Assembly: GCF_006345805.1 (NCBI RefSeq)
Contig: NW_021832145.1
Span: forward strand, 1-48,880
DNA from: Octopus sinensis
Taxonomy: Eukaryota
Length of the DNA: 48,880 bases
Direction: 5' to 3'
Below, in pieces: positions 215 through 26,646 of the stretch. Within the stretch, counting starts at the first letter, position 1, and every line of letters begins with the position of its first letter. Both the position numbers and the translations under genes were made by a program. The notes beneath the pieces are model-generated. The model searched no databases, had not been told where the DNA came from, and saw only the letters and a list, made by a program, of their open reading frames with translations.

Positions 215-312
215 CTTCTGGATGCCGAAAGAACGAAACTAATCATAAGTTTTCGCAGCAGTGAAAGAAGTCACATCGCGAGCCTTGCTTGGAATAACAC
301 CAGTTTCTGTAG
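215..312 (+). CDS. CDC20: CDC20-like exon A (WD40; LLDAERTK...[11 protein letters not shown])
   Basis: Polypyrimidine tract + TAG acceptor at 212-214, 98-nt open exon, AG|GTCGGT donor. Aligns to CDC20 LWDVQQQKRL...GSLSWNSYILSS. Too short to appear in the ORF track. Confidence 0.85.

Positions 313-26646: not shown

What the first reader, a model, noticed from the sequence alone, without database searches (positions are those of the whole stretch)
215..26646. Divergent CDC20-family APC/C coactivator: KEN and ABBA receptors degenerate, D-box patch and IR tail kept
Seen: the spliced 244-aa frame. Known: in human CDC20 the KEN box is bound by N329, N331, T377, Q401 and R445 (plus D184/Y185/Y186, which lie outside this window), the ABBA motif involves R262/Y279/I280, and the D-box pocket uses D464/E465. 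By manual alignment this protein has GGDDG for GGNDN (N329D, N331G), GGYETD for GGGTSD (T377E), NSK|VC for HSQ|VC (Q401K), HEAKPL for HTSRVL (R445K), WNNTSF for WNSYIL (Y279T, I280S) and R262I. The WKYP motif is also replaced by WKDRNP. SDE (D464/E465) and the terminal IR are intact. Inference: a specialised, D-box-biased coactivator that may escape the mitotic checkpoint complex, which needs the KEN/ABBA sites. It would be functionally analogous to meiotic or tissue-specific activators such as Cortex, Ama1 or CDC20B. As I recall, vertebrate CDC20B lacks the IR tail, so this is not simply CDC20B-like. A cephalopod or molluscan member of this kind may be uncharacterised.
Basis: partly seen in the sequence, partly recalled or inferred. 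Interest (0 to 1): 0.8.

Follow-up and report, generated by a model that had tools for sequence, protein, structure and literature searches.

The report
Divergent CDC20 paralogue in octopus
The window holds the last five exons of an intact octopus gene from a conserved but undescribed branch of the CDC20 cell-cycle family, found across molluscs, brachiopods and annelids, that keeps the parts for docking on the APC/C and reading D-box signals but has lost the sites that read KEN and ABBA signals.

Summary
Five + strand exons (215-312, 2945-3155, 20831-20956, 21878-22064, 26534-26646), all with AG/GT borders, splice into exactly 244 aa. They match NCBI's partial 'cell division cycle protein 20 homolog [Octopus sinensis]'. 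The window is that whole contig, so the 5' exons lie off it.

An alignment to human CDC20, with numbering checked against PDB 5g04_R, confirms N329D, N331G, T377E, Q401K, R445K, Y279T and I280S. It adds V295E. D464/E465 and the IR tail are kept.

The gene is not a cephalopod oddity, a pseudogene or the canonical CDC20. It belongs to a well-supported clade (NJ bootstrap 95-99%) found in cephalopods, gastropods, bivalves, a brachiopod and annelids. Those species also carry canonical CDC20 genes whose receptor residues are invariant. Argonauta has a second CDC20-type gene with N329, N331, Q401 and R445 intact.

Across the clade the C-box, the D-box Arg site and the I/V/L-R tail are kept (83-90%). 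KEN sites (40%; 8% in cephalopods) and the ABBA core (0-3%) are lost. dN is 0.18-0.26 with saturated dS.

A D-box-biased coactivator that the checkpoint may not inhibit is the best reading, but it is inferred, not tested. Orthology to vertebrate CDC20B is possible and unresolved.

The parts
215..312 (+). First exon in the window. It encodes [32 protein letters not shown](S), the end of blade 2 and start of blade 3. It holds WNNTSF (Y279T, I280S). The 5' exons carrying the C-box, KILR region and blades 1-2 lie off the contig.
   Evidence: AG at 213-214 and GT at 313-314. tblastn with cuttlefish P0002 residues 77-108 gives 78% identity. The homologous exon is 98 nt in Argonauta and cuttlefish as well.
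2945..3155 (+). Exon 2 of the window, 211 nt. It encodes [14 protein letters not shown]...[10 protein letters not shown]...HSVTK and carries V295E, Q310R, N329D and N331G.
   Evidence: AG/GT borders. It is 96% identical to the Octopus sp. protein P0003 and 79% to cuttlefish.
20831..20956 (+). Exon 3 of the window, 126 nt. It encodes [42 protein letters not shown] and carries T377E, R380G and Q401K.
   Evidence: AG/GT borders. The exon is the same size in Argonauta and cuttlefish.
21878..22064 (+). Exon 4 of the window, 187 nt. It encodes [14 protein letters not shown]...[34 protein letters not shown] and carries R445K, with WKDRNP in place of WKYP.
   Evidence: AG/GT borders. The exon is the same size in Argonauta and cuttlefish.
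26534..26646 (+). Last exon, 113 nt including the TGA stop. It encodes [38 protein letters not shown]464/E465 are kept (26548-26553), R468 is C, and the IR tail is at 26638-26643.
   Evidence: AG acceptor and stop codon at 26644-26646. It is 73% identical to the last cuttlefish exon.
313..26533 (+). Four introns (313-2944, 3156-20830, 20957-21877, 22065-26533). They are filled with microsatellites, a 24-bp minisatellite and SINE-like repeats.

Best explanation
The window carries the 3' five exons, encoding roughly blades 3-7 and the tail, of an intact gene under purifying selection. I call its group the 'D clade': a distinct, fast-evolving branch of the CDC20/Fizzy family. It arose no later than the common ancestor of molluscs, brachiopods and annelids, and it sits in these genomes alongside canonical CDC20.

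Shown:
- the gene model, and its membership of the CDC20/Fizzy WD40 fold;
- orthologues in three cephalopod lineages and in other lophotrochozoans;
- co-existence with canonical CDC20 genes;
- selective retention of the APC/C-docking elements (the C-box DR[FY]IP in orthologues and the I/V/L-R tail);
- selective retention of the D-box arginine site and leucine-pocket residue (L176, D177, P179, D464, E465);
- loss of the KEN receptor (N329/N331 clade-wide, plus T377/Q401/R445 in cephalopods);
- loss of the ABBA pocket (I235, Y279, V295).

Inferred: the protein still docks on the APC/C through its C-box and tail and presents D-box substrates, but cannot read KEN or ABBA degrons. BubR1 uses KEN and ABBA contacts, and Mad2 uses the KILRxxxxP motif, to hold CDC20 in the mitotic checkpoint complex. 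That motif reads N-V/I-L-P in cephalopod orthologues. The protein would therefore be a coactivator that the checkpoint inhibits poorly or not at all. The most plausible use is a specialised division programme such as gametogenesis or meiosis.
For: - Gene model and identity to the NCBI protein.
- Family: Pfam CDC20/Fizzy WD40 gives 194.5 bits for the fragment and 261.7 bits (cut-off 200) for the full Argonauta orthologue. The AF2 model of that orthologue has a propeller with pLDDT above 90. Its best structural matches are human Cdc20 chains, with TM 0.92 and rmsd 1.7 A.
- Orthologues and clade. NJ bootstrap for the clade is 99% and 95%.
- Canonical CDC20 in the same species (Haliotis, Mercenaria, Pinctada, Physella, Lingula). 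A second CDC20-type gene lies on another Argonauta contig.
- Site table: canonical KEN residues 'DYYQNNTQR' and D-box residues 'LDPDE' are invariant from a cnidarian to human. The D clade keeps LDPDE, the C-box and the IR tail.
- Retention of canonical residues in the D clade: D-box set 83-90%, KEN set 40% (non-cephalopods) and 8% (cephalopods), ABBA core 0-3%, background 52-58%.
- Residue roles: Zhang et al. 2019, PMC6712056.
- Constraint: dN 0.18-0.26 with dS saturated, no stop codons or frameshifts, and near-identical exon sizes (one exon three bases shorter in cuttlefish) in Octopus, Argonauta and cuttlefish.
- N-terminal exons with FDRYIP lie upstream of the cuttlefish gene model and are present in P0003 and P0306.
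- The oyster orthologue occurs as a 1,490-nt contig with an uninterrupted 435-aa ORF in an assembly of a sequencing run, while the gene spans 6.7 kb in the genome. This indicates a spliced transcript.
Against: - There is no functional, binding or expression evidence for any cephalopod member.
- The 5' third of this particular gene is not on the contig, so its C-box and D177 are assumed from orthologues.
- Argonauta has E465R, a charge reversal at the D-box arginine site, and an LR tail. Physella has D177A. D-box reading may therefore not be universal in the clade.
- Two glycines (N331G, R380G) are fixed in the clade rather than variable. This hints at a new function for the top face of the propeller, not simple loss.
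- Many WD40 signature residues are changed (GH to GR or QH, WD to LD). The protein could act as a non-activating competitor or have left the APC/C altogether, as vertebrate CDC20B has.
- The retention counts are not phylogenetically independent.
Confidence: 0.6

Rival explanations
1. The gene is the protostome counterpart of vertebrate CDC20B and works like it. On this reading it is a CDC20-derived propeller that no longer activates the APC/C and instead acts with PLK1 and Separase in centriole amplification in multiciliated cells.
For: - The D clade and CDC20B share two fixed derived residues at sites invariant in canonical CDC20: N331G (86% and 100%) and R380G (93% and 100%). Shark CDC20B also shares R468C.
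- Both clades are derived at 17 of 158 canonical-invariant columns, against about 10 expected (hypergeometric p = 0.002).
- One NJ tree places CDC20B as sister to the D clade.
Against: - Support for that grouping is only 22-29%. It falls to 8% with a different taxon set and alignment, and long-branch attraction is likely.
- D-clade proteins keep the C-box and IR tail. CDC20B lacks them and does not bind the APC/C.
- The site patterns differ. CDC20B keeps the ABBA pocket (83%) and loses D-box residues (55%), whereas the D clade does the reverse.
- No mir-449 or mir-34 was found in the cuttlefish gene.
- No MCIDAS-like or CCNO-like neighbour lies within 10 kb in abalone, oyster, Lingula or Argonauta.
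Confidence: 0.2
2. It is a decaying duplicate or pseudogene of CDC20, and its receptor sites are drifting.
For: - The sequence is highly divergent, at about 34-40% identity to human CDC20.
- Receptor residues differ among cephalopods: N329 is D or S, T377 is E or D, and R445 is K or Q.
- Amino-acid identity is only 65-73% among the three cephalopod proteins compared.
Against: - The reading frame is open across five exons with canonical splice sites.
- Exon sizes are the same in three lineages except for one 3-nt difference in cuttlefish.
- dN is 0.18-0.26 while dS is saturated, giving omega of about 0.15 or less.
- The clade is conserved across three phyla.
- D-box residues and structural residues are retained above background.
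- The orthologue is confidently predicted to form a propeller.
Confidence: 0.03
3. It is simply the canonical but fast-evolving CDC20 of cephalopods.
For: Cephalopods were absent from the best 120 relatives of a snail CDC20.
Against: - Its closest relatives outside cephalopods are the D-clade genes of abalone, clams and oysters. Those species each also have canonical CDC20.
- Argonauta hians carries both a D-clade orthologue (P0306) and, on another contig, a CDC20-type gene (P0091). P0091 keeps N329, N331, Q401, R445, LDPDE and the IR tail.
Confidence: 0.04
4. It is a pseudo-activator. It docks on the APC/C through its C-box and tail but recruits few substrates. It would act as a competitive brake or as a scaffold with a new ligand on its altered top face.
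For: - The docking elements are retained while two of the three degron sites are lost.
- G331 and G380 are fixed in the clade, which suggests a remodelled and constrained top surface.
Against: The D-box arginine site and pocket residue are retained at 83-90%, well above the 52-58% background. That retention is hard to explain if substrate recruitment were dispensable.
Confidence: 0.12

Closest known systems
Canonical CDC20 / Fizzy (human CDC20, PDB 4GGC, 5G04; Spisula and other mollusc CDC20)
   Same: - The same seven-bladed propeller: Pfam PF24807, and Foldseek TM 0.92 with rmsd 1.7 A for the Argonauta orthologue.
- A C-box DR[FY]IP in the orthologues.
- A hydrophobic-Arg C-terminal tail.
- D-box receptor residues L176, D177, P179, D464 and E465.
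   Different: - The KEN receptor is degenerate. Of its nine residues, the six that lie in the window are all changed in O. sinensis. The three off the contig read D-I-Y in the Octopus sp. model P0003.
- The ABBA pocket is gone: Y279T and V295E in the window, and I235N in the orthologues.
- KILR reads N-V/I-L-P in cephalopod orthologues, so the basic residue and the proline spacing of the Mad2 motif are lost.
- R380G and R468C.
- Distance to a cnidarian CDC20 is roughly 3-4 times that of canonical mollusc CDC20s (1.17 versus 0.30-0.40).
Vertebrate CDC20B (host gene of miR-449; Revinski et al. 2018)
   Same: Both are divergent CDC20-derived propellers. Both share N331G and R380G, and both have lost N329.
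   Different: - CDC20B has no C-box or IR tail and does not bind the APC/C.
- CDC20B keeps the ABBA pocket, and in tetrapods it loses D177 and E465.
- No mir-449 or mir-34 lies in the cuttlefish gene.
- The phylogenetic link between the two is unresolved.
CDH1 / FZR1
   Same: Both have the same fold (TM 0.94 to yeast Cdh1, PDB 4BH6), a C-box and an IR tail. CDH1 also lacks a functional Mad2 motif and is not inhibited by the checkpoint complex.
   Different: - By established knowledge, CDH1 keeps both the KEN and the ABBA (A-motif) receptors.
- In the NJ trees, which were rooted on one of the CDH1-like sequences, the other three CDH1-like sequences did not fall among the CDC20-type sequences or inside the D clade.
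Lineage-specific meiotic or tissue-specific coactivators (Drosophila Cortex and Fzr2, yeast Ama1 and Mfr1)
   Same: The concept matches: an extra, fast-evolving CDC20-family member kept alongside the mitotic one. NCBI's automatic name for the Pomacea orthologue is 'meiotic fizzy-related protein 1-like'.
   Different: I compared no sequences from these proteins here. They are lineage-specific to flies or fungi, so orthology is not expected. The comparison rests on my own knowledge of those proteins and is only an analogy.

Membership tests
CDC20/Fizzy family of APC/C coactivators | Seven-bladed WD40 propeller of the CDC20/Fz type | tested here: met
   Against Pfam PF24807 the window fragment scores 194.5 bits, E=3.3e-57. 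This is just under the 200-bit cut-off because only profile positions 78-292 are present. The full Argonauta orthologue scores 261.7 bits over positions 1-292. The AF2 propeller has pLDDT above 90. The best Foldseek hits are human Cdc20 chains, with TM 0.92.
CDC20/Fizzy family of APC/C coactivators | N-terminal C-box (DRYIPxR) that contacts APC8 | tested here: inconclusive
   The C-box is not on this contig. It is present in orthologues as DRYIPFR (Octopus sp. P0003), DRFIPFR (Argonauta P0306) and FDRYIPFR, the last encoded upstream of the cuttlefish gene model.
CDC20/Fizzy family of APC/C coactivators | C-terminal Ile-Arg tail that binds APC3 | tested here: met
   The protein ends ...KTIR* at 26638-26646. 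The tail is VR in cuttlefish, LR in Argonauta and IR in nearly all other D-clade members.
CDC20/Fizzy family of APC/C coactivators | D-box co-receptor (D177 and E465 arginine site, L176 pocket) | tested here: met
   D464 and E465 are present in the window. L176, D177 and P179 are present in the Octopus sp. (P0003) and Argonauta orthologues; the annotated cuttlefish protein starts after L176/D177, and the upstream exon translated reads VLDMP. Retention across the clade is 83-90%. Residue roles are from PMC6712056. Actual binding was not tested.
CDC20/Fizzy family of APC/C coactivators | KEN-box receptor (D184, Y185, Y186, Q310, N329, N331, T377, Q401, R445) | tested here: not met
   The window carries Q310R, N329D, N331G, T377E, Q401K and R445K. 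Cephalopod retention is 2 of 24 cells.
CDC20/Fizzy family of APC/C coactivators | ABBA / A-motif pocket (I235, Y279, V295) | tested here: not met
   Y279T and V295E are in the window, and I235N is in the orthologues. Retention is 0 of 8 cells in cephalopods and 1 of 33 in the rest of the clade.
CDC20/Fizzy family of APC/C coactivators | Mad2-interacting motif KILRxxxxP (specific to CDC20) | tested here: inconclusive
   The region is off the contig. Orthologues read NVLPLTTKN, NILPLTTKS and NVLPLSYRN, with no basic first residue. The clade-wide signature is [IV]LP, although Mercenaria's KILPICSTP still fits the motif.
CDC20/Fizzy family of APC/C coactivators | Binds and activates the APC/C | not testable with these tools
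   This needs biochemistry.
Vertebrate CDC20B | Lacks the C-box and IR tail and does not bind the APC/C | tested here: not met
   D-clade proteins have both elements. The properties of CDC20B are from PMC6220262.
Vertebrate CDC20B | Hosts miR-449 in an intron and lies beside MCIDAS and CCNO | tested here: not met
   Rfam gathering-threshold scans of the window (the last five exons only) and of the whole 61-kb cuttlefish locus found no mir-449 or mir-34. Genes within 10 kb in abalone, oyster and Lingula are RPS21, an M1 peptidase, and SMYD-like and NSD-like genes; no neighbour was called in the Argonauta flanks. The flanks are short, so the synteny test is weak.
Vertebrate CDC20B | Monophyly with CDC20B in a gene tree | tested here: inconclusive
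   The two are sisters in one NJ tree, with 22-29% bootstrap. They are not sisters in another, with 8%. The shared N331G and R380G favour the link.
Pseudogene / decaying duplicate | Disrupted frame, lost introns or neutral evolution | tested here: not met
   The frame is intact, the introns are conserved, and dN is far below dS.

The most novel reading that the evidence does not exclude
The lophotrochozoan D clade, including this octopus gene, and vertebrate CDC20B descend from one ancient bilaterian duplicate of CDC20. On this reading CDC20B is not 'vertebrate-specific and recently evolved'. Its ancestor was a genuine APC/C-docking coactivator with a C-box, an IR tail and a D-box receptor, and with an already remodelled KEN face (G331, G380). 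Vertebrates later stripped off the APC/C-binding parts, while lophotrochozoans kept them.
Probability: 0.2. Interest if true: 0.7.

Novelty: new variant of a known kind. Interest (0 to 1): 0.5.

Why it matters
CDC20 reads three degron types (D-box, KEN and ABBA). The spindle checkpoint silences CDC20 through the same KEN and ABBA sites and through the Mad2 motif.

This natural family member has been conserved across at least three animal phyla. It keeps the APC/C-docking elements and the D-box site but has lost the other two sites. That makes it a ready-made separation-of-function variant. It could show what a D-box-only, checkpoint-insensitive coactivator does in vivo, and which cell types of molluscs, annelids and brachiopods need one.

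The finding also bears on annotation. These genes are currently named 'CDC20 homolog', 'CDC20.4-like', 'CDC20.5-like' or 'meiotic fizzy-related 1-like', so orthology-based transfer of CDC20 function to them is unsafe.

If the link to CDC20B held, it would change the accepted origin of a gene used in vertebrate multiciliated cells.

Tried and rejected
- **Pseudogene.** Rejected because the frame is intact, exon sizes are conserved and dN is far below dS.
- **Sole or canonical cephalopod CDC20.** Rejected on clade membership and on the second Argonauta gene. I could not retrieve a canonical O. sinensis CDC20.
- **Search with a profile of the clade.** It mostly returned unrelated WD40 proteins. 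It did yield the Argonauta orthologue P0306.
- **miR-449 or miR-34 in introns.** None was found in the window or in the cuttlefish locus.
- **Micro-synteny with MCIDAS and CCNO.** Flanks of 10 kb in four species were uninformative. The Pomacea protein was not on record.
- **Placing the clade relative to CDC20B and canonical CDC20.** NJ with bootstrap gave conflicting, weakly supported positions. No maximum-likelihood software was available.
- **dS.** It is saturated for all three cephalopod pairs, so only an upper bound on omega can be given.
- **Literature.** Searches for the automatic names, for accession numbers, for octopus CDC20 and for the sequencing run holding the oyster transcript found nothing relevant.
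- **Rest of the window (26.6-48.9 kb).** I found no second convincing gene, only repeats and a weak mariner-like HTH ORF.

Full report
**What is in the window**

The window is AT-rich, repeat-laden animal DNA. They join through AG/GT borders at 215-312, 2945-3155, 20831-20956, 21878-22064 and 26534-26646 into a 735-nt frame of 244 codons plus TGA.

The product is 100% identical to the 209-aa partial protein that NCBI calls 'cell division cycle protein 20 homolog [Octopus sinensis]'. The only contig recorded for that protein is 48,880 bp, the length of this window. The window is therefore a whole unplaced contig. The gene runs off its 5' end, and the C-box, the KILR region and blades 1-2 cannot be recovered from it.

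**Check of the residue claims**

HMMER aligns residues 8-224 to human CDC20 residues 259-475 at E about 1e-40. The human sequence I used for numbering is identical to PDB chain 5g04_R over all 499 residues. In a 35-sequence MAFFT alignment the window protein shows these changes:

| Site | Change in window |
|---|---|
| Q310 | R |
| N329 | D |
| N331 | G |
| T377 | E |
| Q401 | K |
| R445 | K |
| Y279 | T |
| I280 | S |
| V295 | E |
| R380 | G |
| R468 | C |
| D464, E465, terminal IR | retained |

Zhang et al. 2019 (PMC6712056) define D177 and E465 as the D-box arginine site, L176 as part of the leucine pocket, and I235, Y279 and V295 as the ABBA pocket.

**It is a conserved gene**

- A cuttlefish protein (Acanthosepion pharaonis, P0002) is 73% identical.
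- An Argonauta hians protein (P0306, 458 aa) is 70% identical.
- An Octopus sp. model (P0003) is 95% identical over the stretch it shares with the window protein, about 30% of the query.
- The five homologous exons measure 98, 211 (208 in cuttlefish), 126, 187 and 113 nt in all three genomes.
- Pairwise dN is 0.18-0.26. dS is 1.5-3.7 or beyond the range of the estimators, which puts omega at about 0.15 or less.
- There are no stop codons or frameshifts.

The N-termini seen in P0003 and P0306, and in two exons lying upstream of the truncated cuttlefish gene model, contain a C-box (F-D-R-Y/F-I-P-F-R). They have N-V/I-L-P where CDC20 has K-I-L-R.

**It belongs to a clade much older than cephalopods**

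I searched 1.84 billion representative proteins exhaustively with a profile built from the octopus and cuttlefish sequences. A group of proteins 401-457 aa long scored 254-303 bits. The mass of canonical CDC20s scored about 200 bits or less.

Cluster look-ups identify that group, together with further divergent sequences scoring about 177-214 bits in the same search, as genes of these taxa:

- gastropods: Haliotis, Physella, Pomacea;
- bivalves: Mercenaria, Sinanodonta, Crassostrea/Magallana, Pinctada, Argopecten, Tegillarca;
- the brachiopod Lingula;
- the tubeworm annelids Lamellibrachia and Ridgeia.

In neighbour-joining trees of the propeller these sequences plus the cephalopod ones form one clade, here called the D clade, with 99% and 95% bootstrap support. 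Its internal order roughly follows the species tree.

The same species also hold canonical CDC20 genes, often two each: Haliotis, Mercenaria, Pinctada, Physella and Lingula. In Argonauta a second CDC20-type gene (P0091, 496 aa) lies on a different contig. It keeps N329, N331, Q401, R445, the D-box residues, the C-box and the IR tail. P0091 is itself rather divergent, and a canonical CDC20 of O. sinensis itself was not retrieved.

**Pattern of conservation**

In 14 canonical CDC20s, from a sea anemone to human, the nine KEN-receptor residues and the five D-box residues are invariant. The table gives the share of cells that keep the canonical residue.

| Residue set | D clade, non-cephalopods | D clade, cephalopods | CDC20B |
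|---|---|---|---|
| D-box set | 83% | 90% | 55% |
| KEN set | 40% | 8% | 67% |
| ABBA core (235, 279, 295) | 3% | 0% | 83% |
| All canonical-invariant columns | 58% | 52% | 72% |

- N329, N331 and the ABBA pocket were lost at the base of the clade.
- T377, Q401 and R445 were lost only in cephalopods.
- The C-box and the hydrophobic-Arg tail are present in nearly all members.
- Exceptions are Argonauta (E465R, LR tail), cuttlefish (VR tail), Physella (D177A) and Pomacea (D177E, E465D).
- These counts are descriptive, because the sequences are related to one another.

**Fold**

The AlphaFold2 model of the Argonauta orthologue has a propeller with pLDDT above 90 over residues 130-440, and a disordered N-terminus. 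Its best Foldseek matches are human Cdc20 crystal structures (TM 0.92, rmsd 1.7 A), followed by Slp1 and Cdh1. Pfam's CDC20/Fizzy WD40 model scores the orthologue at 261.7 bits, above the 200-bit cut-off. It scores the truncated window product at 194.5 bits.

**Mechanism (inferred)**

By established knowledge of the APC/C, the C-box and IR tail dock a coactivator on APC8 and APC3. The groove between blades 1 and 7 forms the D-box co-receptor together with APC10. The top face binds KEN, and the groove between blades 2 and 3 binds ABBA. The checkpoint complex holds CDC20 through BubR1's KEN and ABBA motifs and through Mad2 binding to KILRxxxxP.

A protein with the retention pattern above should still dock on the APC/C and read D-boxes. 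It should fail to read KEN and ABBA degrons, and the checkpoint should capture it poorly. No binding, activity or cephalopod expression evidence exists.

The only transcript evidence I found is for the oyster orthologue. It is a 1,490-nt contig from a sequencing-run assembly with an uninterrupted 435-aa ORF, whereas the gene spans 6.7 kb in the genome.

**Relation to CDC20B**

Revinski et al. 2018 call CDC20B vertebrate-specific and recently evolved. They report that it lacks APC/C-binding domains and does not bind the APC/C.

Points in favour of a link:

- Amphibian, mammal and shark CDC20B sequences share with the D clade two derived glycines that are fixed within each clade, N331G and R380G.
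- The two clades are derived at 17 canonical-invariant columns, against about 10 expected.
- One NJ tree makes them sisters, with 22-29% support.

Points against:

- A second tree does not recover the grouping (8% support).
- Both are long branches.
- Their site-retention patterns are opposite.
- No mir-449 or mir-34 lies in the cuttlefish gene.
- Flanks of 10 kb show no MCIDAS-like or CCNO-like neighbours.

I treat orthology with CDC20B as an open possibility, with a probability of about 0.2.

**Verdict**

The finding is real. The gene is an intact member of an undescribed, phylum-spanning subfamily of CDC20-type proteins with a reduced set of degron receptors. I found no paper on it, though those searches cover only the held library. 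It is a new variant of a known kind. The finding is of moderate interest now, and of higher interest if the D-box-only, checkpoint-insensitive activity or the CDC20B link were demonstrated.

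Noticed in passing
window 3344-3924: A 24-bp minisatellite (TGTCCATAAATTACCTTTACAAAG) with 24 copies at 96% match lies in the intron after the second exon of the window. 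In one frame it reads as a long false ORF.
   Followed up: partly
window, 15 sites (e.g. 6954-6978 +, 24361-24385 +, 35390-35414 -, 46555-46579 +): A tRNA-like SINE core (GAGTTCAAATTCCGCCGAGGTCGAC) occurs 15 times on both strands, against 0 expected by chance. Units of 183-184 bp are tandemly doubled at 24338-24821 and 35251-35622.
   Followed up: partly
window 503-739, 5036-5290, 6041-6370, 14957-15142, 39265-39816 (+); 12675-13232, 46940-47356 (-): A second interspersed repeat family is present. Its translation repeatedly reads '...[24 protein letters not shown]...'. I did not classify it.
   Followed up: no
window 47790-48092 (+): This ORF resembles the N-terminal HTH of a mariner/Mos1 transposase (Pfam HTH_48, E=0.002, below the cut-off). 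It is probably a transposon remnant. I saw no other convincing gene in 26.6-48.9 kb.
   Followed up: partly
L001 21218-21336 (-) and L001 50287-50346 (+): The cuttlefish orthologue has a 5S rRNA copy inside an intron (58.6 bits). It also has a partial duplicate of its last exon about 2.8 kb upstream of the real one. Its NCBI gene model lacks two 5' exons that encode the C-box (L001 7631-7933 and 9890-10039).
   Followed up: partly
proteins P0196/P0253 (Haliotis), P0195/P0210 (Lingula), P0191/P0248 (Aplysia), P0252/P0257 (Mya): Many lophotrochozoans carry two canonical-type CDC20 genes, both with intact KEN and D-box receptors. With the D-clade gene, that makes three CDC20-type genes per genome.
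   Followed up: partly
protein P0137 (Tachypleus tridentatus): A horseshoe-crab CDC20-like protein also has N331G, with GGEDG in place of GGNDN. It grouped with the D clade in 45% of bootstraps in one tree and 6% in another. The subfamily may reach beyond Lophotrochozoa.
   Followed up: partly
protein P0003 residues ~221-252 versus window 215-312: The Octopus sp. gene model replaces the exon homologous to window 215-312 with an unrelated 31-aa stretch (QVDPATTCNRCRINSAADVYSVVDDVFLC). That stretch is not encoded in this window, so it is probably a mis-predicted exon. The same model keeps a KEN tripeptide 14 aa after the C-box, at the position of human K97-E98-N99. Cuttlefish and Argonauta have lost it.
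   Followed up: no
protein P0051 (Scyliorhinus canicula, CDC20B-like): The shark CDC20B-type protein still has the D-box residues LDPDE and C468, while tetrapod CDC20B has lost D177 and E465. CDC20B seems to have lost its coactivator features stepwise.
   Followed up: no
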